From contig OX638149.1 in NCBI GenBank assembly GCA_951804945.1, positions 70,866,001 to 70,930,000 of the forward strand: DNA of 64,000 bases. Reading direction: 5' to 3'. Position 1 is the stretch's first letter, and each line of letters opens with the position of its first letter. The notes beneath the pieces were generated by a model. It had not been told where the DNA came from, did not search any database, and saw only the letters and a list, made by a program, of their open reading frames with translations. The translations under genes and the position numbers were made by a program. This document shows positions 11,627-49,436 of this stretch, in pieces. This DNA is from Podarcis cretensis (lineage: Eukaryota).

Positions 11627-11778
11627 TAGAATCATATATATATACAGTTTTAGAGCTGGAAGGGACCACAAGGGTAATCTAGTCCAACCCCTTGCAATTC
11701 AGGAACCTTTTTTTCCAAAGTGGGGCTCAAACCCACACCACTAAGATTAGGAGCCTCATGCTCTACCAACTAAACTAA
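11627..11778 (-). mobile_element. tRNA-head / CR1-tail SINE
   Basis: Minus strand reads tagtttagttggtagagcatgag...gggtttgagcccc then ggttggactagat...cccttccagctct; related tails near 14285 and 40730. Confidence 0.7.
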
Positions 11779-13010
11779 CTCCCATATCATCTCCCAAGTC
11801 AGATAGGCCACTTGTCAGCATAATCCCTGTCTGATCAGGACTGAAATCTAATTTATTGTCTCTTATGCCCTTATATGGAACCACACCAAGAAGCTAGCTG
11901 AGAGGAGTACATTTAGGTTTTGTTGTAGGCTAGCAGAGGTAAGATCAGGGGAGTACAGGACTAATGGAGAAGCATGGATATCATTTCAAGGAAAACAATG
12001 TAGTCACATGGCATACTATTGATATTTTTGTGTATGTAAGATTTCTTTTTTACAGGCAGATCTGTTAGGCAGAGTTCAGCACTGATCTTTCAGTTGTTGA
12101 GACAGTCAGCGCCACTATTTTATTAGCCTGCCTTAACAGAGAAATGGCATGTAGTTTCCACAGAAATCTATTGCCATCTGCTGGCTGCTATTTGGTTGCA
12201 CTGAATAACAGTTCTAATGAAACACCTGTAAGCTAATTCAGAAAGGTTGGCTAGAAATAGAAATCAGGGAAACATCTGGAATAATTTGGAACTTAGGATT
12301 GTTTTGGGATGGATTGTAATGTCGTATGACTTTGTATATAATTGAACAACAGATCAAAATATGCAGTGCATCTGATTTCAGTGACCCTAAAAGCTAATCC
12401 TCATTTTGTAATATAAACATGGAAGGAATGCAATGCTGCAATGTAGGTGGAGTATCTGAAGTTTCAACAAATACATTAAATGGGGGGGTATAGAGCCATC
12501 TCTGCATTATTTGCAGGAGCTTTGAAAAGACATTTGCTTTGATTAAAAAAAAAGCACTGTGTAATTGAAAATAGAGAAGAAATACTACTTTATGTACCTT
12601 GTAGACCTGCTTCAGATTCTTTGAAAAGCTACTCTCTACACACAAATTTCAGTGCAAATTTTGGAGTTCAATCAGGTGAAAATAGAGCAAACCAAGCTTA
12701 CATATTCCACTATCCCATTGTTCTCACTTTTGGACCTTGTACCTCTGTGTGTCTTGGTGCAACATTTATACTCAAGAATGAACCTTCTGTAAGATTTTAT
12801 CTTCAAATAAACAGAATTATTAGTGAGTTGCCCACTAGTTTACTCAACATGAATGTGTAGGAGAGAATATATTCATGATTATTATATGTACACATATATC
12901 ATTAGGATTAGTTGTCTGTCTCATTAATGATTTTTATTGCCACAACAGTTGAATACATTGTTGCTCCTACTCTTGAAAATTAATCTGATGACTCATCGTT
13001 GTGCTTTCAG

Positions 13011-13181
13011 AAACTAGCTCCTGGAGTCAGTCAGTTTGTTTACACCTGTGTTCAAGATCATCCAATATGGGCTAACCAGCAGTTCTGGGAAACAAACTTT
13101 TACAGTGATGTGGAAAATCAAATTCGTTCACTCTATCTTTCAGCTAAGGAAGACAATCATCCACAACACTTAAAGCAGAAA
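13011..13181 (+). CDS. SBF2: SBF2 exon, 171 nt (KLAPGVSQF...HLKQK)
   Basis: tttcag| and |gtaagt; inside ORF 12999..13202. Confidence 0.95.
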
Positions 13182-14608
13182 GTAAGTAAAACAATAATAT
13201 AGAAATTTTAATGAGCAAAGAAATAAGCTAAACTAAATCTGTGTTGAAGTCAGTTGGCATTTAGTTAAAGAAAATGTTTGATATTGTATAGTTTGTTGGG
13301 CTTTCTTGAATTAATATGCCAGGCAAGGGGTGTGTTCCTAAATACTGGAATTACTTCTTAAATCTTATGGTACTAGTTGTAATGAACTTGTTAATAGTGT
13401 GGGGAAGATTTAATATGTTTTATATATAAAGCAGCACAACTATCCAGGATAATTCATTAATACTCACAAAATAAATGTTTACTTTCCTTTAGAATAGATG
13501 AGTATATTATATTAATATGCTCACAGTCCTAACATGCATTACTACATGTTTTTCTAGCTTTGGCAGCACTCTGTTTCTTCTGCTTCAAATCAGACAGCAT
13601 TCCCAGACAAAACTTTACCCTTCCCTTAAGAATGTCCCCCCGCCTTCATCAGAAATGGATAGTAGATGTTGTGAATATTGGTGCCAAAGGAAACCTAAAA
13701 TGCAGATTTTCCACCCTGGTGCATAAACATAATTTCCAAAATAACTCTTTCCCCCAATAGCAGTAATGAATAACTGTGTATGAGTTTAGCTGCACAAATC
13801 TTGGAGCTTACTTTGTATTGGAACCCAAAGGCTAATTCAGCTGTCATGTCTTATCTAATTCCACAACAACTTTTGTTCTGGACCCTTATATCATGCAGTA
13901 TAATTGTATTGGCATTGTAATACTGTATATTTTGTACCAGGAGCATCTAAAAGTTCCTTCAGAGGCACACAGCATTCATGAAAAATAAAAATTCTTGTCC
14001 CGAGCACAAGCCAAAGATTTTCCCCTACCAGAGGTCTTTCCAAATTTAAGACCTTGGGAGGTATAAGCATCAATCTGGTCAATGTGGGGTAAAAATGTAA
14101 AATTTTCATCAAGATGTGTAGGCATAGTGGTTGGGGAGAAAGACCACTTGTCCACATGGTTCTGTGACCTGGCTAGCAGAGGGGAAAGCAGTAGTTATGG
14201 GGGGGTGCATGAGAAGTGGATGGTAGTGAAAGAGAGAGTCAGTGACAAGCTTGTGTGAACATGTATGATATCCAATACATGCTTATAGAATTGTAGAGTT
14301 GGAAGGGACCCCAGGGGTCATCTAGTCCAACCCTCTGCAACGCAGAAATCTTGCCCACCGCCATCCCTGGTTGGGCTTAAGCCACTGTTAACATCCAGAC
14401 ACACTGACACATTGCACCACAGTACATTGACTACTTGTCAGACTTACCAAGAAGCTTCACAACTGAACACATCCAAGATGTGTACTGGATTGCTCTCAAG
14501 TTACAAAAAAAAAGCACACTCCTTCCAGCCACTTCGTTACATGCTTCTTAAGAGCACATATGTAGAAAACTAATATCAAAATCAGCCCTTTGCTTGTGGC
14601 TTTTACAG

Positions 14609-14628
14609 TTACTTCAGCCACAGATAAA
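14609..14628 (+). CDS. SBF2: Candidate SBF2 microexon, 20 nt (LLQPQI+aa), in frame only with 14832-14838
   Basis: ACTAAT branch-like motif at 14569, ttttacag| acceptor, |gtaagt donor; no transcript evidence. Confidence 0.55.
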
Positions 14629-14831
14629 GTAAGTTTTCCTTCTCCCTTTCGTTGACTTGCTTTGAAGTCTTATGTCCAGTGCAGAGCTGAAAAGGCATGT
14701 CAGTGCTGCAGCATAAACTGGCTCCCATTTCATGTTGCTTTGTACAATGTGCCATCATTCTGTGTTATGTTGTTCTCTTTCTCTCCTTTCATTTTCTAAC
14801 CTTTTCCTCCCTTTTGGGGGCTCATAAACAG

Positions 14832-14838
14832 TGTTGTG
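14832..14838 (+). CDS. SBF2: Candidate SBF2 microexon, 7 nt (tgttgtg)
   Basis: Long pyrimidine tract 14770-14815 with CTAAC (14796-14800), cag| acceptor, |gtatgt donor, TGCATG at 14873. Confidence 0.55.
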
Positions 14839-15061
14839 GTATGTGAAATTGGACAGATCAAAAATATGAAGCTGCATGACTCTGGAAATATACTTTCTGC
14901 TTGTGTGACTACAGGGTCATCTTTAAACAAAGATATGCAGATTAGGCATGATAGCTGGTGTCAATAATATTATTGCACCTATACTGCAGGTATTACAGGG
15001 ATTATGCAGGGTGGGTGGGTGTTATAATGATTTAAGATGGGATGGATATTGAGCTACATCT

Positions 15062-15292
15062 GGACCAGTGTGGCGTAATGGTTAAGAGTGTTGGACTATG
15101 ACCTGTGAGACAAGGGTTTGAATCCCTACACAGCCATGAAGCTTACTGGGTGATCTTGGGCCAGTCACTATCTCTTAGCCTAGTCTACCTCCCAGGGTTG
15201 TTGTGAGGATGAAACGGAGAGGAGAACCATGCACACGATCTTGAGCTCCTTGGAAGAAAAAGTTAGTACATAAATGTAATAAGTAAGTAAAA
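15062..15292 (+). mobile_element. tRNA-derived CORE/MIR-like SINE
   Basis: tggcgtaatgg A box, gggtttgaatccc B box, ctgggtgatcttgggccagtcac core, cagggttgttgtgaggat. Confidence 0.8.
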
Positions 15293-16279
15293 TATAGGCA
15301 TGTCCTAATTGTCCTGTTATAAAAGGAACAGGTTGCATCTTTCCAGTATAGCAAAACCAGTAAAATGCCAGGAACTTGGCAATTCTAGACAAAGTAATAG
15401 AAGAAGGCACTCTGCCATCTTAGCGTGTCAATAATGTTCCTCTAAATTAGATGGACTATCAAACATGAAGGAAAAGCCATGAACAGGAAAGTTGCTACCA
15501 ATATTAACTGTACTATAGGGAAGCAACAGAGAACAGTGGTAGCAGAATTGGGAAATAGAAGCAGTTGTAGCACATATGCACACTTGAAGCTTTTCCTCAT
15601 ATTCTTCAGAAGTCTAAAAGGCTGATCATACAATTGTAGGTTCCTGCTGCTTTTTCCTTAAAAAATGAGGTTATGTGAAAACAGTTGCCAGTCACCTTTG
15701 CCCTAATTTCTTTAGACTACAATATGTTGTGTCTACGTGCCATCCACTTCGTTTACAGAGAACCACTGTTAGATTTGAAATCTGGCATGTGAAAACATGA
15801 AACTTTTTCAGTGCTATAGGCTATTTATAGCTACACGTGGCTCACTGACTCAAGCACTACAGAAGATTGGACAGTATCATCTGTGCCAGGCAGTTAGTTG
15901 AATGCCAGGCAGTTAGTTCTCAAGCCAATTCATATTCACTGTGAGAACGAGCCAAGAGTTTGCAAGCAGAATGAAATCCTAATGTATATATTAGCTTGTA
16001 AAACTGCAATGAGGAAACAAACAAAAACAATTATACCCACCAACAAGCAGATTAAATTGATGTTGTGTTGAAAGGGCTATAAGTGAATTAGACTTGCCTT
16101 CAGTATCGCTCCATGTTGTGCATTCCTTTTTCTATGGATTCTGTAGGTATGTCAGAAATAGTTTTTTTAAATTTTAAGACCAGCCATGGCCCTGTTCTTG
16201 CACAAGGATCTAATTTCAGATGCAATGGAAAGTAAAGGATAAGATGGGCACGACATTTGGAATGCATTTGGAACATTTC

Positions 16280-16618
16280 GACTGCAATAGGTCTTACCAC
16301 ATTGAGCCGCATGAAATGGAAGTCCATCAACCTCACCAAGAAATAAGACCTATTGCAGTCATTAAGAGTCGTCAACAGGCTCATCACAGCTATCTGCCAA
16401 TCACCCAATCCCACCACCCTTCTGAGTAATACCCCTCCCCACCTTCTCACTATATAGAAGGGTCTGGTGACTTCTGTTTCAGTGTATCTGAAGAAGTGTG
16501 CATGCACACGAAAGCTCATACCAAGAACTAACTTAGTTAGTCTTTAAGGTGCTACTGGAAGGAATTTTTTTATTTTGTTTTGACTATGGCAGACCAACAC
16601 GGCTACCTATCTGTAACT
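16280..16618 (+). mobile_element. Penelope-like element terminal (pLTR) fragment
   Basis: CCAAT/TATA, hammerhead core, tail ttag...taaggtgctactggaaggaatttttt...gactatggcagaccaacacggctacc; 5' boundary uncertain. Confidence 0.75.
16484..16521 (+). ncRNA. Minimal type I hammerhead ribozyme (PLE type), predicted cleavage after C16517
   Basis: GTAT-CTGAAGA-A-GTGTG(CATG)CACAC-GAA-AGCT-C-ATAC: helix I GTAT/ATAC, helix II, palindromic AGCT helix III. Confidence 0.8.
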
Positions 16619-16619
16619 G

Positions 16620-16764
16620 GAACGATGGAGGTGGAGGCGCTCCTTCAGGTATACTGGACCGAGGCCATTTAGGGCTTTAAAGGTCAGCACCAACACTTTG
16701 AATTGTGCTCGGAAACGTACTGGGAGCCAGTGTAGGTCTTTCAAGACCAGTGTTATATGGTCTC
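16620..16764 (-). mobile_element. L2-type LINE ORF2 3' fragment
   Basis: Reverse complement resembles the 48880-49436 LINE sequence (caattcaaagtgttggtgctgacctttaaagccc). Confidence 0.7.
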
Positions 16765-16864
16765 ATATATAGTTTATAGGCAGCCTTTGTCCCCATTCCA
16801 AAAGAACGAAAATAATTTAAAGCCACAGTATAATATTCTACCGTCTAACCATTTTCTCCCCTAG

Positions 16865-17127
16865 GAGATGAATTCTGATGCCCAGGCCCAAGAAAAGACT
16901 GCCATGGACTTAGCTGCTGAGCAGATGCGTCTGTGGCCAACACTTAGTAAAGAGACTCAACAGCAACTCGTACAAAGTGAAGAAAGTATGGTTTTCAGTC
17001 AGGCAATTCATTTTGCTAACCTCATGGTATACCTGCTGGTGCCACTGGACACCAGTAAAAACAAACTCCTAAGAACTTCAGCAACGGGCGACTGGGAGAG
17101 TGGAAGCAATAGCATTGTCACAAATAG
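16865..17127 (+). CDS. SBF2: SBF2 exon, 263 nt ([20 protein letters not shown]...SIVTN)
   Basis: ctag| and |gtgtgt; ORF 16868..17200. Confidence 0.95.
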
Positions 17128-17218
17128 GTGTGTAATCGGGACAACCACATTATTTTCAAATAGAGTGATGTTTATTTTGCTCCAATGTAGATTTAACTGA
17201 TTAGAATTGCTTTTTTAG

Positions 17219-17391
17219 CATTGCAGGCAGTGTTGCTGAGAGTTATGATACTGAAAGTGGGTTTGAGGATTCTGAGAACAATGACATTGCCAATGCTGTC
17301 GTACGCTTCATTACTAGGTTCATAGACAAGGTTTGTACAGAAAGTGGAGTTACACAGGATCACATTAGGAGTCTTCATTGTATGATACCAG
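17219..17391 (+). CDS. SBF2: SBF2 exon, 173 nt ([17 protein letters not shown]...HCMIP)
   Basis: ttttag| and |gtatga; follows a 91-nt intron. Confidence 0.95.
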
Positions 17392-17665
17392 GTATGAAGA
17401 GCTATACTGAAGTCTTGAAATATTTTGAGAGAGAGATATTTTGTACTGTCTGAGAAAAGATATTTTTGAAAAGAGCTTCTTTGTGTGTGTTATTTTCAGT
17501 TGACAATAAGGGTTTGCACTTCTAATTTTAGTCTGTCGCTGTCTACATAGTCATGTGAGAGCCCTATTCTGGGCTTTCTGAAAGCAGTTTTTAGAAGGGT
17601 GGAATTATTTTAGTTTGTTTTCTTCTTGTTATGTTTTGCTCATTTGCGGTGGTGTTTGCTCCCAG

Positions 17666-17739
17666 GAATTGTAGCAATGCACATTGAGACTCTGGAGGCT
17701 GTTCATCGAGAAAGTAGAAGGTTGCCACCAATTCAGAAG
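17666..17739 (+). CDS. SBF2: SBF2 exon, 74 nt ([24 protein letters not shown]), GC donor
   Basis: cccag| acceptor; AAG|gcaagt donor required to join PIQK to PKIL. Confidence 0.93.
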
Positions 17740-18692
17740 GCAAGTATTTTGGACTTTGTTTACACTATTTACATTTTAGGTATATGGCAAGTTTGCTCAG
17801 TTTTCTGTGGGGTTTTTCCCCCTAATATAATTGGGGAGATATTTGGAACATTTAAAAGGATGCTGAAAAATATGAAAAATTCAACAAATAAGCAGCTTGG
17901 CTATAGTTTTGTGAAATATGAACTAGAGAAAAAGTATCAGCCAAACCTCTGAATCAAAATAAGCTGCTGTTGCATGTCCATTGTTGATTTAAGACCTATT
18001 CTTTATCGACCCACTCCCTTTTCCAGTCAAACAGCATCTAAGCAAATAATGCTTTCCCTTTTGGACTGAAGAGGCAAAAACTCTAACCCAGACACTGGGA
18101 ACCTGTGACCCTCCTGCGTTGCTGAACTGCAACTCCCATCACGTTCCCCCCCCCCCCCCGACCATTGGCTATGCTAAGTAGGCAATGTTGGGAGTCCAAC
18201 AATATCTGGAGAACCAGAGATTCCCCACCCCTGCTCCAGCCCATCAGAGCCTTGCATCTTTGCCACTTTTCTAAAAAGATGGAACTTATTTTACTCAGTT
18301 CTTACTCTTATCATAGCTGAAAACCAGTCTGTCCAGTAAGCACAGGGGCAGAGGGATGTTTCTGACCATGAATGGTGATGAGAAATCTGAAAGAGTGCAG
18401 GAAAGCCCTAGGGAGACCAGATAAATGACTATCCGCCCAGCTGGCACACCTTATCCCTTCTATGAATGCTAACAATGTGATTGTTAGTGTGGTATAGTGG
18501 TTAGAGTGTTGGACTAGGGCTCTTTGTTAAGTCCCTTTTCTACAAAATACACCCATTTTTACAATAACCTGTCTTTTACAAACTATAGCTGTAATTCCAG
18601 CTCAATCCTTTTTAGTTTGACACCTGTAGTGTACTATGTGTAACACAGTTTGTGTATATATATATATATATAAATCTTGTCTTTGGGCTCAG

Positions 18693-18888
18693 CCCAAGAT
18701 TCTACGACCAGCTTTGCTACCAGGGGAAGAGTTTGTGTGTGAAGGTCTCCGTGTGCTTCTGGATCCTGATGGCCGAGAGGAGGCAACTGGAGGATTGCTT
18801 GGAGGCCCTCACATTCTCCCTGCAGAAGGAGCTTTGTTCCTTACTACGTACAGAGTTATATTTAAAGGCACACCTCATGATCAACTAG
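18693..18888 (+). CDS. SBF2: SBF2 exon, 196 nt, GRAM region ([13 protein letters not shown]...TPHDQL)
   Basis: ctcag| and |gtatgg; ORF 18636..18992. Confidence 0.95.
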
Positions 18889-20016
18889 GTATGGTCTTCT
18901 TTATGAATGTTAAAATAAATTTTTACTTCAGAACACACTTGAAGCTAACCCGCAGTCCATTTAAGTTGCTTAAAACAAATGTGCCAGAATAGGATCAGTA
19001 TCTATAATTCAACCTTTTGATCGGTATGAATTTCTGTAATCTGCATAGCTAATTAAATAACAAATTATTATAATTGTTCTCATAAGCCTTATTCATGTGT
19101 TCAAAAGAACATGTAAGGGCTTAAACTGGGGAGAACATACATGTCAGGTGCACTCACTGCACCCCAACTTTATCACATTGACTAGGTCTGAAGGGGGGCA
19201 TTTAGGCACATTCAGCTGGACACATTTACAAGCCTTCCTATGATTGGGAACCATGTATTATCTGCCGAATGCACTTAGAAGCCCCCTTCAAACCCTCCCG
19301 CTGAACTTGGAAAGGCTTACAATGGAGTGGGGACACTAGGCATATGGAGGGAACTTGGAGGCAGCATGCACAAGCCTGCTTCTCAGTTTAAGTCCTTTTT
19401 TCCTTTGAATGCATGGATCGGACTGTAATGTGATAGGCTTCATAAAAAAGTTTTCTTGAACTGTCTGGAGCATAGACATAAAGACATATATGTGGAGCAT
19501 AGGTAGATGGATGGATGGATGGATGTGCTTATATGGACAAACAAAAAATGTGATCCAGGAAATTGGTCAGATGCAATTCCCATGTCCACAACTGTTAATT
19601 ATGCATTTCTGGTCTTGAAAGTGATGTAGTCATATCCTTCATTCTCATGCTCATACTGTGGCCTAGAATGCATGTCAAGGTAGAGCATGGTTCAATACAG
19701 CATGCATAATCTGTGTTATCTGGGTTAATGCAGACCTCCTAGACCTGTCCTCCTCCCTTACACCTGGAAATGGAATTTGGCAGCATTTCTCAGGTTTTCA
19801 TAGCATGTGAACCAGAGATTATCATTTATAGCAAACACAAGTCAATTTCAAAACAAGCCAACTTCAAACTTTGGGCTATGGATCAGACTTTTTAGTTTGT
19901 TATAAACAACTATCCTTTGTTCACAAGCAGTAACAATCTGAGATTAAGTGCAAGCAAAGTAAGGTCTCCTGCCAGGAGCCAAAGGCTTGCTTGGGCTCAT
20001 TTCAGCTTATGCACAT

Positions 20017-20777
20017 TGTGAGTCGAGGACCCTCCATGTGCATATTGGTAAAATGAGACACAAGGACACATGTATTTTAGGTTAATGGGCTAAAGTAGGC
20101 CGCAACTTTTATTGGTTACAGCATGCGTGTGGTATTGGCTTAGGCATTAGGTCAAACAACCTATATTTGACCCCACCCATGCAGCAGGGGTCTTTGGAGG
20201 TTAACAAACAGTGGGAGGAGCTTGTTGATGCAAATACAACTTGAAGCTTCCCCTGATGTCACTGGGGGTTGTGCCATGGCCCTAGGCACTGGCAGGGCAT
20301 TGGACAGAATCCACGACCACTGGATTCCTTTAATGGAATACCCAACGAGGGGCAGGGTAGGTGATGGCCAAACCCCACCCACCAACGCACAACACATATC
20401 CCAGTGCCTAACCACCAGTACAATAAAGTTGTGGCGATTTGCTATGAGGTAGGCGAAAAACCAAGAGGCTGGTGCCAATCTGCCAAATGGATAAAAACTC
20501 CTACCAGGCCCCCTGGTCAACCAGGGCAACCAACCAAAGTCCATAGCAAGGTCAAAGCATAAATATGACCTAAAGGGAGGGAGGGCGGGCAGGTGATCCA
20601 ACGACTCCAGGGAAACAGAATGAGGCGCGGGGCTGCTGCGGCCGCCTGAATGCAGCTAGATCTCGCCCCCAAGCCAACCCTATTGGCTGGCCTGGTGGGC
20701 GGGGCGCGGCAGCCGGGTGAGTGATGCAGGGGGCCAAGTACACCCCCCTGCTGACGCGGGAAAGGCTCCCACTCACA
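20017..20777 (-). mobile_element. Solo LTR (761 bp)
   Basis: TGTGAGT...ACTCACA termini, imperfect 4-bp flanks ACAT/ACAC, minus-strand AATAAA at 20108-20113, GC-box-rich U3-like end. Confidence 0.7.
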
Positions 20778-22785
20778 ACACCTCCCCTCTGGGAGGAGGA
20801 GAGGCTTTATGCTAAGCTGTGGTATAGCATGACGTGAAGGTCCTGGTTATAGGTTACAGCTATCTACATTATACTCAGAAGAGACCCATTGAAACTAATG
20901 GACCTAAATTAATCATGTTCATGATTTTAAAGGATCTACTCTGAGTAGGAGAAACATGTTAAAAAGACAAGAGCAACTACTCAAGGATTACCTGGATTAC
21001 TCACATGAATAAAAGTAGATGGATAGATGGATGGTTGGTTGGATGGTGGCAGATATGCACAAATAATATGGAAACTTCATCTTGTGCAGGCAGAAATATT
21101 GAGTACATGACCTTTATTATCATTGGCTACTAGCACAATAGTTATTTTCTGCCTCTGCTGTTGGAGGAAGTAAGTCTCTGAATACCAGTTCCTGGGAATT
21201 AAAAGTGGGGTAAGTGCTGTTGCACTCATGCCCTATAGGCATCTAGTTGGCCACTGTGAGATCAAGATGCTGATGGGCCATTGGCCTAATCTAGCAGGCC
21301 CTTCTTGTGTTCTTATATACAGGATCAAGAAGTTGGTGTTACATGTTTAAACTGAGAAAGTTGTCAATCAGTGTTTTTTGCTTGCATTTGTAGCAGTTGT
21401 AAGTTCTGAATTACAGTTCATTTATCTTATTCCTGGCTAGTTCTGTGGTTCTTATGTGGCTAGTGTTTAACATGAGTGTTAGATATATAGCCAGTGAATG
21501 AGAAATTAGTGAACTGGTTTCTGCAACAACTCAGTGGAAAGTAATTTGAATCTATATAATCCTTCACTTTATTAAAAGAGCAGAAATTTTAAAAATTACA
21601 GTATTTTAAAATGTCATGAGAACAAATAATGTTAACAATTTTTAAAACTGCTATCTTGGGCTGATGAAAAAATAGCAATTATTTATTTAACAATTATCTT
21701 ATTTGTTTAGTGAAAATTGTAACTGTAGCTTTTTGAGGATAAGAATTCTACTTTGAAATCTCTGTGAGTTACATAAAAATAAAGCAGTGTGTTCCAATTA
21801 TTTCTACAGGCTGCAGAAAATAGATATGTAGTGAGAGCGATGCATCAAATATTTTGATGCATCACTTCTTTAGTGCACGCATATTTATTGGGATAATACA
21901 TAGACTTAGTTCTCATTAACATAGTGGTGGCTTGAACCGAAGACTTAAGACACTAGCCAATAAATGCCAGGTTGATGGTCAGCAACTTCTGTATCAGCAG
22001 CAGGTGACAAATCTGATATTATACTGACTTCGCATAATTGATATGACAGTGATACACTAGATACGCCATTTATAATGTTTGGAATTCATGTATAAAAGTG
22101 TGGCCACATGTTAACACTTTTATATAAATGGCTCTTTCCACACAACCGAAAGTGCCCCACAAAACAATTTTCCCTTTTGTTGCAAAACTGTAAACTTTGA
22201 CCCACTGCCACTAGAGCTATGCTTGTCATCCCATAATGTACAACTTTTCTAAATTCATCTTTCTCATGAAGATAGCCAAGTTGCTGAAATTGCAATTGAG
22301 CAATCTCAATTAAGCAATCCTAAACACATTTTTCTTGGGTGTAAGCTTCACTAAACACAGTAGGACTTACTTACTTACTTACTTACATACTTGTAAACAT
22401 ACATATGCTGAATATCTGTCATAATACATTTTAATGTAGTTTGGTGTAATTGAAGGAATAGATGTTACAAGGCATCATGTTGGTTTATTTTTAAAAAAAT
22501 GTTAATGTTAATAAAATAAATCAATTGATTCAGCTTGGTAAGCTGACTGAGGAAGTACATGTTCCTTTTTTTTGGGGGGGGGACTGATAGGCTCTTTAAC
22601 ATGTCATTCATGAAATGAGCTCAATATTTTGATAGACGTTCCAGCTTTGATTATGGCTTTGACTTTGTTGCATCTTTTATGCATCTGTGTAAGACTGATC
22701 ATACATATTGAGTAGAGTATGTAAAATATGAACAGCTCTGATAACTTGAACCGTGACTCAGTGCTCCTCTGACTAATATTCTTAG

Positions 22786-22913
22786 TGGGAGAACAAACTG
22801 TTATTCGGAGCGTTCCCATTGCCTCAATAACTAAGGAGAAGAAAATTACCATCCAGAACCAGCTTCAACAAAGCATGCAGGAAGGGCTACAAATTACCTC
22901 TGCTGTGTTTCAG
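22786..22913 (+). CDS. SBF2: SBF2 exon, 128 nt ([19 protein letters not shown]...AVFQ)
   Basis: cttag| and |gtaaaa; phase 1/0. Confidence 0.94.
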
Positions 22914-23223
22914 GTAAAATAAAGCTGCTTAAAGTTCATAGTTTGTTGGGTTTTTTTGAACACTCTTACTTCCTTCTGCATGTTATATTTACAATATCAC
23001 CAATTCCAAAATAAATCAACTCTCATGTCACTGAACTTTCTACTAAGAAAGTCTGCATATAAAGGCCACAATCAAACACAATTTTAAAAAATGGAGGCAG
23101 CCAATGTTGTTGTTGTCATGTTTGTTCTTTAAAATAAATAAAAAGTGTTGTTGTTGTTGTTTTAAAAAAACTCCCGCACAATTAAGTTAACTTTAAGCCC
23201 TGTTAGTTTAACTAAGGTTTTAA

Positions 23224-23263
23224 GGTATCTGAAGAAGTGTGCATGCACACGAAAGCTCATACC
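23224..23263 (+). ncRNA. Minimal type I hammerhead ribozyme, second copy, predicted cleavage after C23258
   Basis: Core identical to the 16484 copy; helix I GGTAT/ATACC. Confidence 0.8.
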
Positions 23264-23316
23264 AAGAACTAACTTAGTTGGTCTTAAGGTGCTACTGGAA
23301 GGAATTTTTTGTTTTG
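23226..23316 (+). mobile_element. 91-nt Penelope-derived insertion (hammerhead + tail) with 15-bp flanking duplication
   Basis: ACTAAGGTTTTAAGG at 23211-23225 and 23317-23331. Confidence 0.85.
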
Positions 23317-24222
23317 ACTAAGGTTTTAAGGGTTATTATTGTTAACTACCTTGGACATCTTCTGTAGAAAGGCAGAGTATGAATTAATTCAACTGAAAAG
23401 AGAGATCATCTTAAAAAAATGGAAACCATTACAACTATAATAGTTTTTCCTAGGAGCATTCCTTTTAAGGGCCACATCTGGAAAAATAAGCAACTGATGT
23501 TGGCACCACAAAATACTCATTTTGCAGAAGAGAACTGGTGATGCTCAGATTTCTCCCACTGCAACAGACAAAACTCAAAAACAAATAAAACACAGATCCG
23601 AAAAAAGCAAGCACACTCCCCTCACAGCACCAGTGCAAGGCAGATATCTGAGGGCACCATGGTTGGTGACCCTGGGTCTAGGTACACTAGGCAGATGTAC
23701 CAAGAACACTATTTTAATCTTTGTCACTCAATGCATCTGCCTCAAATTTATGACATAAATGTAGAGTAGGCTTTCTTAGCAAAAATCTGGACAATTTTTA
23801 TGCAACATTGGATGTCATTTTCATAAATTAATAAAGTGCCATCGCCTTCATTTAAAAATAGGTTGCCCATGACTTGTTCATAGTACAATAGAGAACTTAA
23901 GCAAAATGCCCATCAAAGAGTGAAAGTATATATGGAATGTATCCATAAACCTGGGCCATAGTTCTGTGGGGTCATGAGTTACTGTACCTGACTTCTGTTT
24001 GCCCACTTTCAGTATTGCCTATTTATTTCCAGGCCTTTTAAGCATGGCAGTTTTTGTCTTCCCTTAGTATTGAAGCACCTTGGTTACAAGACATGCAAAT
24101 AGGCCAGGGGATGCAGTGCCAGTCTCATAAGCAGCTTCTGTAGGAAGGAGCATTTGGGAGAGTCCTGTTCCAGGTTCCCCAAACATACTCTATTATCCTC
24201 CACTCTGTCTCAGCTTTCTGAT

Positions 24223-25511: not shown

Positions 25512-25688
<177 letters not shown>

Positions 25689-48879: not shown

Positions 48880-49436
48880 AATTCAGAGGCCAGGTTGCTC
48901 ACCGGGCAAGATGGTTTGAGCATATAACGCCAATCCTGTCAATTACTGTATTGGCCCAAATATAAGCTGCACCCGAATATAATCCACCCCTTTAAAATTC
49001 AAGGGGAGAAAAGGAAAAAAATACTATACCTGAATATAAGCTGCTCCCTTAAAATTCCACAGGCACTCACACCCGTTTCATTTTACCATATGTCTGTTTC
49101 AGCAACAATACTGTAAAAGCCAATTTTTGTAAGGTTACGAATTTAAGCCATACTTTAACTTTTCACAGTCAGAATTTGGGGGGAAAGTGAGGCTTATATT
49201 CAGGCCAATACAGTAGTTTCTGGGCCCAATTCAAAGTGCTGGTTTAGACCTATAAAGCCTTAAACAGCTCAGGACTACAATACCTAAAGGACCGCCTCTT
49301 TCCATATGAACCTACCCAGATCCTAAGATCATCTTCTGAGGCCCTTCTTCATGTGCTGCCTCCTCCACAAGAGGTCCGGAGGGTGGCAACTGAGAATGGG
49401 CCTTTTCTGCAGTGGCTCCCTGCTTGTGGCATGCAA
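48880..49436 (+). mobile_element. L2-type LINE 3' ORF2 fragment split by the MITE
   Basis: catataacgccaatcctg...|gtttctgggcccaattcaaagtgctgg...gggccttttctgcagtggctccc. Confidence 0.7.
48946..49213. mobile_element. Tc1/mariner-type MITE nested in a LINE fragment
   Basis: TA TSD, TIR CTGTATTGGCC(CA/TG)AATATAAGC 20/22. Confidence 0.85.

What the first reader, a model, noticed from the sequence alone, without database searches (positions are those of the whole stretch)
16484..23263. Two identical-core hammerhead ribozymes on the sense strand bracketing an in-frame five-exon block of SBF2
Seen: both copies have CTGAAGA, an extra A, helix II GTGTG/CACAC, GAA, a palindromic AGCT in place of helix III, a TC cleavage site and helix I (GTAT/ATAC; GGTAT/ATACC). 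Predicted cuts after 16517 and 23258 are 6741 nt apart. The enclosed exons total 263+173+74+196+128 = 834 nt = 278 codons, phase 0 at both ends, and include most of the GRAM region. Established: Penelope-like elements carry minimal type I hammerheads whose palindromic helix III supports cleavage as dimers; an extra A after A9 is tolerated in the CChMVd viroid hammerhead. Inference: two independent insertions give each monomer a cis partner in one pre-mRNA. That could allow ribozyme cleavage that attenuates SBF2, promotes in-frame skipping, or releases a 6.7-kb RNA that might circularise. It may equally be a neutral coincidence of an abundant repeat, since co-transcriptional splicing could separate the two copies.
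Basis: partly seen in the sequence, partly recalled or inferred. Interest (0 to 1): 0.85.

Follow-up and report, generated by a model that had tools for sequence, protein, structure and literature searches.

The report
Two Penelope-type hammerhead repeats in SBF introns
Two short copies of a very abundant lizard retrotransposon, each carrying the minimal hammerhead-ribozyme motif typical of Penelope-like elements, lie in two introns of an SBF-type gene; they look like ordinary passengers, not a device that regulates the gene.

Summary
Identical 35-nt hammerhead-like cores lie at 16488-16522 and 23229-23263 on the + strand, the sense strand of an SBF1/SBF2-type myotubularin-related gene. The predicted cut sites are 6741 nt apart. 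The five enclosed exons are 263+173+74+196+128 = 834 nt, with phase 0 at both ends.

The motif has every feature published for the minimal hammerhead of Penelope-like elements (PLEs), including the extra base after A9, so the extra A is a family hallmark. Both copies are separate retroelement insertions. Copy B is a 91-nt, 5'-truncated insert with a perfect 15-bp target-site duplication. Copy A is longer and carries the optional PLE "tail".

The family is very high-copy in three related genomes and forms head-to-tail tandems elsewhere. This scan has already noted hammerhead motifs 123 times in 537 windows of the same genome. A same-strand pair a few kb apart is therefore expected many times by chance, and an in-frame exon block has a one-in-three chance.

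Nothing supports an effect on the gene. The only runs available were contigs, which cannot show RNA ends. The one tested lizard PLE hammerhead (Anolis) cleaves only with PLE protein and leaves no RNA-seq ends at its cut site. Verdict: a known kind of repeat, and the pairing is most likely a neutral coincidence.

The parts
16263..16629 (+). Copy A: longer copy of the PLE-type hammerhead-bearing repeat (upstream pLTR-like part, hammerhead, downstream part and tail). The 5' limit is approximate.
   Evidence: Single-copy contigs of three related genomes stop aligning at 16262, and summed depth rises 10^3- to 10^5-fold after it. Joints 16629->16296 (+4 nt) and 16629->16484 (+39 nt) in other genomic copies define the unit ends.
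16484..16522 (+). Minimal hammerhead motif A. The predicted cut is after C at 16517.
16587..16629 (+). About 43-nt 3' extension present in copy A and absent from copy B. Read as the optional PLE 'tail'; it contains the AC-rich stretch at 16589-16607.
   Evidence: Alignment. Tail concept and the two reverse-transcription start sites come from PMC11167929. Inference.
16333..16483 (+). 151-nt segment of copy A that many other copies of the family lack (long form versus short form).
   Evidence: Joints 16326-16338 -> 16484-16489 in contigs of related genomes.
16620..16764 (+). Fragment of an unrelated high-copy interspersed repeat that abuts copy A.
   Evidence: Loose ends at 16620 and 16764 with a consensus continuation in other copies. 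76% match to 49211-49298 on the minus strand.
23226..23316 (+). Copy B: 91-nt, 5'-truncated, tail-less insertion of the same repeat.
23224..23263 (+). Minimal hammerhead motif B. The predicted cut is after C at 23258. The two G of helix I (23224-23225) belong to the duplicated target sequence.
23211..23225 (+). Target-site duplication of copy B, left copy (15 bp).
   Evidence: Read directly.
23317..23331 (+). Target-site duplication of copy B, right copy (15 bp, identical).
   Evidence: Read directly.
12984..13181 (+). Reading-frame-open part of the upstream exon. It ends at 13181 on a codon boundary; its 5' limit was not determined.
   Evidence: Pfam SBF2 2.5e-24
16865..17127 (+). Enclosed exon 1 (263 nt).
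   Evidence: Pfam SBF2 1.7e-17
17219..17391 (+). Enclosed exon 2 (173 nt).
17666..17739 (+). Enclosed exon 3 (74 nt, GC donor).
18693..18888 (+). Enclosed exon 4 (196 nt, GRAM).
   Evidence: Pfam GRAM 1.4e-4
22786..22913 (+). Enclosed exon 5 (128 nt).
25512..25687 (+). Next exon downstream. It starts at 25512 on a codon boundary; the 3' limit is a candidate donor only.

Best explanation
These are two separate, 5'-truncated insertions of one young, very high-copy, protein-less retroelement family of the Penelope type (pLTR-derived, retrozyme-like). Each carries the family's own minimal type I hammerhead motif. In the element's life cycle that motif sits in head-to-tail tandem units of about 190 or 340 nt. 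There two neighbouring copies can form a double hammerhead through the palindromic AGCU, probably helped by PLE protein. In these SBF-gene introns the two copies are solitary monomers 6.7 kb apart. They are transcribed as part of the pre-mRNA and removed with the introns, with no designed effect on the gene. The same strand, the bracketing of five exons and the in-frame sum are coincidences of an abundant repeat. Shown: sequence, anatomy, target-site duplication, repeat abundance, tandem junctions elsewhere, exon arithmetic. Inferred: neutrality, tail assignment, mode of cleavage.
For: The motif has all the PLE minimal-hammerhead features listed in PMC4209133, read: core bases, an unpaired base between 9 and 10.1, G10.1-C11.1, palindromic 15.2-16.2, and helix I of 4-5 bp.

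Copy B is 91 nt between perfect 15-bp direct repeats. The flanks of A and B are unrelated. Copy A runs about 43 nt further 3' than B through an AC-rich stretch, matching the optional 30-40-bp PLE tail produced by two reverse-transcription start sites (PMC11167929).

In contigs of three related genomes, summed depth over 16388-16633 is about 10^4 to 10^5 times that of the flanking intron. Joints link unit end to unit start, showing head-to-tail tandems.

The scan holds 123 hammerhead notes in 537 windows of this genome, in both sense and antisense orientation in introns.

No RT or endonuclease ORF lies between the copies.

Published: PLE minimal hammerheads cleave poorly in vitro even as dimers. 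The Anolis PAc hammerhead is inactive without PLE protein, and RNA-seq reads do not start or end at its cut site.
Against: No RNA data of this species could be examined at read level, so low-level cleavage in the pre-mRNA is not excluded. Both cores are intact and identical, but youth of the insertions explains this as well as selection would. The copy-number figure is rough, because the tool warns that summed contig depth is not a copy number. No genome-wide census of pairs or of strand bias could be run.
Confidence: 0.85

Rival explanations
1. The two sense-strand monomers pair in cis within the nascent pre-mRNA, through AGCU/AGCU plus swapped helix I, or each pairs with transcripts of other family copies. 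They then cleave at a low rate. This slightly lowers gene output, favours skipping of the 834-nt block, or releases a 6.7-kb RNA that may circularise.
For: Both cores are complete and on the transcribed strand. Double-hammerhead action of motifs with short helix III is established for tandem copies (PMC4209133). The skipped block would stay in frame. In Xenopus, retrozyme sequences are under-represented in introns, which is compatible with some cost (preprint 10.64898/2026.07.22.740005).
Against: The copies are 6.7 kb apart with four introns between them, not the 190-340 nt of tandem units. The predicted double-hammerhead (-16.7 kcal/mol) is less stable than the two separate monomers (-20.8). 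In copy A the core is predicted to be sequestered by an upstream UUCAG. The Anolis PLE hammerhead needs PLE protein and leaves no RNA-seq ends. Minimal hammerheads show low activity in vitro. Thousands of such copies lie in genes, so nothing singles out this pair.
Confidence: 0.08
2. The perfect 14-nt palindrome of helix II plus its loop (16496-16509 and 23237-23250) lets the two direct copies pair with each other across the exon block. Flanking inverted repeats do this in back-splicing. The pairing would promote an 834-nt exonic circRNA (22913 joined to 16865) or exon skipping, without any ribozyme chemistry.
For: Cofolding of the two 53-nt segments gives -37.8 kcal/mol through a 14-bp intermolecular duplex, against -20.8 for the monomers. 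The copies lie 348 nt upstream of the first enclosed exon and 313 nt downstream of the last.
Against: Each palindrome folds on itself as a hairpin first, because it is local and fast. From my own knowledge, 14 bp is short compared with the roughly 30-40 nt of complementarity that supports back-splicing in reporter studies. No read evidence exists, and every copy of the family carries the same palindrome.
Confidence: 0.03
3. The two copies arose by local duplication or gene conversion, or are the two terminal repeats of one full-length Penelope element. On this reading they are not two independent insertions.
For: The 69-nt core is identical, and both copies are on the same strand.
Against: Homology stops at the element borders and the flanks are unrelated. 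Copy B has its own 15-bp target-site duplication. The copies differ in their 5' and 3' extent. Five host exons lie between them and no RT or GIY-YIG ORF does.
Confidence: 0.02

Closest known systems
Minimal hammerhead motifs of Penelope-like elements (Cervera & de la Pena 2014, PMC4209133; Lunse, Weinberg & Breaker 2016, known here only from the reference list of PMC6765202)
   Same: Type I topology with open helix I of 4-5 bp. Complete catalytic core. An unpaired base between A9 and G10.1. A G10.1-C11.1 pair. No helix III of its own, but a palindromic 15.2-16.2 (AGCU), implying action as dimers. Mostly dispersed single copies from 5'-truncated insertions. Reported in reptiles.
   Different: Nothing essential. 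This is a lizard subfamily whose helix II and loop form a perfect 14-nt palindrome. Activity of this particular sequence is untested.
Poseidon PLE of Anolis carolinensis (PAc; Frangieh et al. 2024, PMC11167929)
   Same: A lizard PLE with the hammerhead near the pLTR-ORF junction, 5'-truncated insertions and an optional tail from two internal reverse-transcription start sites in an AC-rich region. Copies A and B here differ in that way.
   Different: PAc encodes RT-EN, and its ORF starts in stem II. No sequence comparison with PAc was possible with these tools.
Animal non-LTR retrozymes (Cervera & de la Pena 2020, PMC7229834; Li, Clavereau & Pollet 2026 preprint)
   Same: Short, non-coding, hammerhead-bearing units that form head-to-tail tandems and derive from PLE pLTRs. 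The reptile consensus averages 176 bp, against about 188 nt for the short unit inferred here. Monomer copies are scattered along chromosomes, including introns.
   Different: The two copies in the window are solitary monomers, not tandems. Circular RNA from this family was not examined.
Conserved intronic hammerheads of amniotes (RECK, CTCL, DTNB; de la Pena & Garcia-Robles 2010, reviewed in PMC6155905)
   Same: Type I hammerheads on the sense strand of introns of protein-coding genes, thought to descend from retroelement ribozymes.
   Different: Those are single, monomer-competent ribozymes with loop-loop tertiary contacts, conserved at orthologous positions across classes. Here the motifs are minimal, dimer-dependent, young repeat copies, and Rfam models including HH9/HH10 give no hit.

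Membership tests
Hammerhead ribozyme, minimal PLE variant | Catalytic core C3 U4 G5 A6 N7 G8 A9 / G12 A13 A14 / A15.1-U16.1 / H17 | tested here: met
   CTGAAGA ... GAA A..T C in both copies.
Hammerhead ribozyme, minimal PLE variant | Unpaired nucleotide between A9 and 10.1, and a G10.1-C11.1 pair closing helix II | tested here: met
   A at 16495 / 23236, with G...C at the base of GTGTG/CACAC. Feature list from PMC4209133.
Hammerhead ribozyme, minimal PLE variant | No helix III of its own; palindromic 15.2-16.2 that allows a dimeric helix III | tested here: met
   AGCT at 16513-16516 and 23254-23257.
Hammerhead ribozyme, minimal PLE variant | Open helix I of about 4-5 bp flanking the motif (type I) | tested here: met
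   GTAT/ATAC in A and GGTAT/ATACC in B. In B the two G come from the target site.
Hammerhead ribozyme, minimal PLE variant | Compensatory changes in helices I and II across family members | not testable with these tools
   Only two identical copies are in the window. No lizard genome can be searched. The metagenome scan gave one chance match.
Hammerhead ribozyme, minimal PLE variant | Site-specific self-cleavage | not testable with these tools
   Needs a bench assay or read-level RNA ends. The runs available were contigs only.
Hammerhead ribozyme (Rfam families Hammerhead_1, _3, _II, HH9, HH10) | Match to a curated covariance model | tested here: not met
   No hammerhead hit at gathering score, or at E<=10 on 16300-23500. 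This is expected for motifs without helix III.
Penelope-like element insertion | Target-site duplication and 5' truncation | tested here: met
   Copy B: 15-bp perfect duplication at 23211-23225 / 23317-23331 around a 91-nt insert that starts at helix I. No duplication was found for copy A, whose 3' side abuts another repeat.
Penelope-like element insertion | Optional 30-40-bp 3' tail in a fraction of copies | tested here: inconclusive
   A extends about 43 nt beyond the 3' end of B, consistent with PMC11167929. With only two copies the two end classes cannot be shown.
Penelope-like element insertion | Head-to-tail (pLTR-forming) tandem arrangement of the family | tested here: met
   Contig joints 16629->16296 (+AGTC) and 16629->16484 (+39 nt homologous to 16296-16332) in a related genome.
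Penelope-like element insertion | RT plus GIY-YIG endonuclease ORF in autonomous members | tested here: not met
   None in or between the copies. The family looks non-autonomous. No autonomous partner could be searched for.
Domesticated intronic ribozyme (RECK/CTCL/DTNB type, CPEB3 type) | Conservation at the orthologous intron position across distant species; monomer-competent fold | tested here: inconclusive
   Only close relatives were available, and their contigs break at the repeat. The motif is not monomer-competent by design because it has no helix III.

The most novel reading that the evidence does not exclude
Two sense-strand minimal hammerheads of a Penelope-type repeat, 6.7 kb apart in one pre-mRNA, find each other through their palindromic AGCU and/or the 14-nt helix II palindrome. 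They then cause ribozyme cleavage or pairing-driven skipping or circularisation of an in-frame 834-nt block that includes the GRAM region. That would be a repeat-borne, dimer-dependent switch on a host gene.
Probability: 0.04. Interest if true: 0.6.

Novelty: already known. Interest (0 to 1): 0.1.

Why it matters
If the pair really acted on the pre-mRNA, it would be the first case of dimer-dependent transposon hammerheads regulating a vertebrate gene. It would also suggest that thousands of intronic copies could do the same. As it stands, the value is practical: in this lizard genome intact-looking minimal hammerheads are repeat baggage and turn up in nearly every few windows. Pairs that bracket exons should not be read as designed without RNA-end evidence or a genome-wide test.

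Tried and rejected
- **Rfam scans:** whole window at gathering score and 16300-23500 at E<=10. No hammerhead family scored. The models need helix III, so this is not evidence against a minimal motif.
- **Other copies in the window:** pattern searches and blastn. Only the two copies exist.
- **Metagenome scan for family members, to test covariation:** one hit, which on reading is a chance match without the ribozyme.
- **RNA evidence:** all 24 runs are kept as contigs and none is on record as RNA. Laying four of them on the intron 13190-16860 gave repeat structure but no molecule ends. I laid only intronic sequence.
- **One full PLE with two pLTRs:** rejected.
- **Segmental duplication:** rejected.
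- **Lunse et al. paper (PMC5785218):** not held. It is cited only through the review PMC6765202.
- **Presence or absence of copy A in relatives:** single-copy contigs of all three genomes stop aligning at 16262 although each record runs on for about 320 more letters. I could not see what those letters are, so dating was not possible.
- **Joined spliced model:** Exons were searched one by one by reference.


Full report
**What is there**

The window holds two exact copies of a 35-nt string, at 16488-16522 and 23229-23263, both on the + strand. Homology extends over about 100 nt: 16476-16575 against 23217-23315, at 94-100% identity.

Read as RNA, each copy has:
- a 5' helix I strand (GUAU in A, GGUAU in B);
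- CUGAAGA, then one extra A;
- a 5-bp helix II GUGUG/CACAC closed by CAUG;
- GAA, then AGCU, then C;
- the 3' helix I strand (AUAC in A, AUACC in B).

The predicted scissile bonds follow 16517 and 23258, 6741 nt apart. A relaxed descriptor of my own required the core, an optional bulge, helix II of at least 4 bp, a palindromic helix III substitute, H17, and helix I of at least 4 bp. It finds exactly these two sites on both strands of the 64 kb and none in 200 shuffles. The motif is therefore real and specific. Rfam's hammerhead models do not score it even at E<=10, as expected for a motif with no helix III of its own.

**The gene**

The + strand carries an SBF-type myotubularin-related gene. 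Pfam was run exon by exon, by reference. It gives the SBF2 domain for the exon ending at 13181 (2.5e-24) and for 16865-17126 (1.7e-17). It gives GRAM for 18693-18887 (1.4e-4, just under the cut-off for this fragment) and Myotub-related further on (2.7e-27).

Splice sites and frames give the enclosed exons as 16865-17127, 17219-17391, 17666-17739 (GC-AG intron), 18693-18888 and 22786-22913. Their lengths are 263+173+74+196+128 = 834 nt. The flanking exons end at 13181 and begin at 25512 on codon boundaries.

**What the copies are**

Copy B is a 91-nt insert (23226-23316) between perfect 15-bp direct repeats at 23211-23225 and 23317-23331. That is a target-site duplication around a 5'-truncated retroelement copy that begins at helix I. 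The two G that lengthen its helix I belong to the duplicated target.

Copy A is longer on both sides. Its 3' end runs about 43 nt beyond that of B, through an AC-rich stretch, to about 16629. The flanks of A and B are unrelated. No RT or endonuclease ORF lies between them, only host exons. They are two independent insertions, not a duplication and not the two terminal repeats of one element.

**The family**

I laid contigs of three related genomes and one possible RNA run on the intron 13190-16860.
- **Repeat block.** Single-copy contigs align up to 16262 and again from about 16736. Between these points the summed depth is 10^3 to 10^5 times the flank: about 15,000-29,000 times in X1, 13,000-23,000 times in X17, and more in X5, over 16388-16633. 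The tool warns that this is not a copy number, so I take it only as "order 10^4 or more".
- **Tandem units.** Joints in other genomic copies link 16629 to 16296 with 4 nt between. They also link 16629 to 16484 with 39 nt between that are homologous to 16296-16332. So the family forms head-to-tail tandems, with units of about 338 nt (long form) or about 188 nt (short form).
- **Long and short forms.** Other joints (16326-16338 to 16484-16489) show that many copies lack the 151 nt at 16333-16483.
- **Neighbouring repeat.** A different high-copy repeat abuts copy A at 16620-16764.

This scan has already noted hammerhead motifs 123 times, 62 of them together with "Penelope", in 537 windows of the same genome. 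They occur in both sense and antisense orientation in introns. Two follow-ups called the carrier a high-copy, protein-less lizard repeat that inserts in the Penelope manner.

**Comparison with what is known**

Cervera and de la Pena (PMC4209133) defined the minimal hammerhead of Penelope-like elements. Its features are a short helix I (4-5 bp), a conserved unpaired base between 9 and 10.1, G10.1-C11.1, and no helix III but a palindromic 15.2-16.2. These motifs occur mostly as single dispersed copies from truncated elements, are present in reptiles, and have low activity in vitro even as dimers. Every sequence feature is met here, so the extra A is a family hallmark and not an oddity.

Frangieh et al. 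(PMC11167929) studied the Poseidon element of Anolis carolinensis.
- Reverse transcription starts at two internal sites in an AC-rich region. This produces the optional 30-40-bp tail and fits the A/B difference.
- The hammerhead cleaves only when PLE protein is present.
- Public RNA-seq reads do not begin or end at the cut site.

Li et al. (2026 preprint) derive animal non-LTR retrozymes from PLE pLTRs and give a mean reptile unit of 176 bp, close to the 188-nt short unit here. They also find monomers spread along chromosomes, with 42-44% of copies in Xenopus introns.

The conserved intronic hammerheads of amniotes (RECK, CTCL, DTNB; PMC6155905) differ. They are monomer-competent, have tertiary contacts, and are conserved at orthologous sites.

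**Is the pairing more than chance?**

The scan notes give a lower bound of one motif per roughly 280 kb. The depth ratios suggest one per 50-130 kb if the genome is 1.5-2 Gb, a size that is my assumption. Under a Poisson model, the chance that a copy has a same-strand neighbour within 6.8 kb is about 2% at the lower bound and 5-13% at the higher densities. That means hundreds to thousands of such pairs per genome. Many would lie in the long introns of large genes, and one in three enclosed exon blocks is in frame. "Phase 0 at both ends" is the same condition as "sum divisible by three" once the flanking introns share a phase. The arrangement is what an abundant repeat produces without selection. 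These numbers are rough, and a real census is the first next step.

**Could the pair still act?**

In the element's tandem arrays two hammerheads lie 190-340 nt apart. Here they lie 6.7 kb apart with four introns between them.

With ViennaRNA on 53-nt segments:
- The canonical double hammerhead has helix II within each copy and helices I and III between copies. It evaluates at -16.7 kcal/mol.
- The two separately folded monomers total -20.8 kcal/mol.
- In copy A an upstream UUCAG is predicted to pair with the CUGAA of the core.
- The most stable predicted dimer (-37.8 kcal/mol) uses the 14-nt perfect palindrome of helix II plus loop as an intermolecular duplex. That duplex is not the catalytic fold.

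These are nearest-neighbour predictions without tertiary structure or proteins. Together with the Anolis data they make efficient cleavage of this pre-mRNA unlikely, but they do not exclude a low rate. No read-level RNA data were available, so cleavage, skipping and circles remain untested.

**Verdict**

The identification as Penelope-type minimal hammerheads and as independent insertions is supported. This is a known kind of element in a known kind of place.

Noticed in passing
window 17739-17745: The 74-nt exon (17666-17739) is followed by GCAAGT, which makes this a GC-AG intron in the SBF-type gene.
   Followed up: partly
window 16265-16387: Summed contig depth over this 5' part of copy A is about 280,000 (X1) and 168,000 (X5) but only 687 in X17. 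The segments to its right are abundant in all three. The long-form 5' segment seems to have amplified in some close relatives and not in another.
   Followed up: no
window 16262/16263: Single-copy contigs of three related genomes all stop aligning at 16262, although each record continues for about 320 more letters that were not shown as aligned (table 8). Those genomes may differ from the window to the right of 16262. CATTTGGAA occurs twice here, at 16254-16262 and 16265-16273.
   Followed up: no
window 14174-14419: This is the most abundant repeat of the intron, with summed depth up to 2.5 million in X1. Hundreds of contigs enter or leave it at 14285-14290 and 14332-14334, and it is also abundant in the possible RNA run X19.
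   Followed up: no
window 11720-11777 (-): Rfam tRNA match covering model positions 8-63 only (32.8 bits, gathering score 29). It lies in an intron and is more likely the head of a tRNA-derived SINE than a tRNA gene.
   Followed up: no
window 16496-16509 and 23237-23250: Helix II plus its loop is a perfect 14-nt palindrome. Two copies are therefore predicted to form a 14-bp intermolecular duplex (-37.8 kcal/mol for the pair) that competes with the hammerhead fold. This may matter for how the family's RNA dimerises.
   Followed up: partly
window 16620-16764 and 49211-49298 (-): Two fragments of another interspersed repeat, 76% alike. The first abuts copy A and is cut at both ends relative to other genomic copies.
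   Followed up: no
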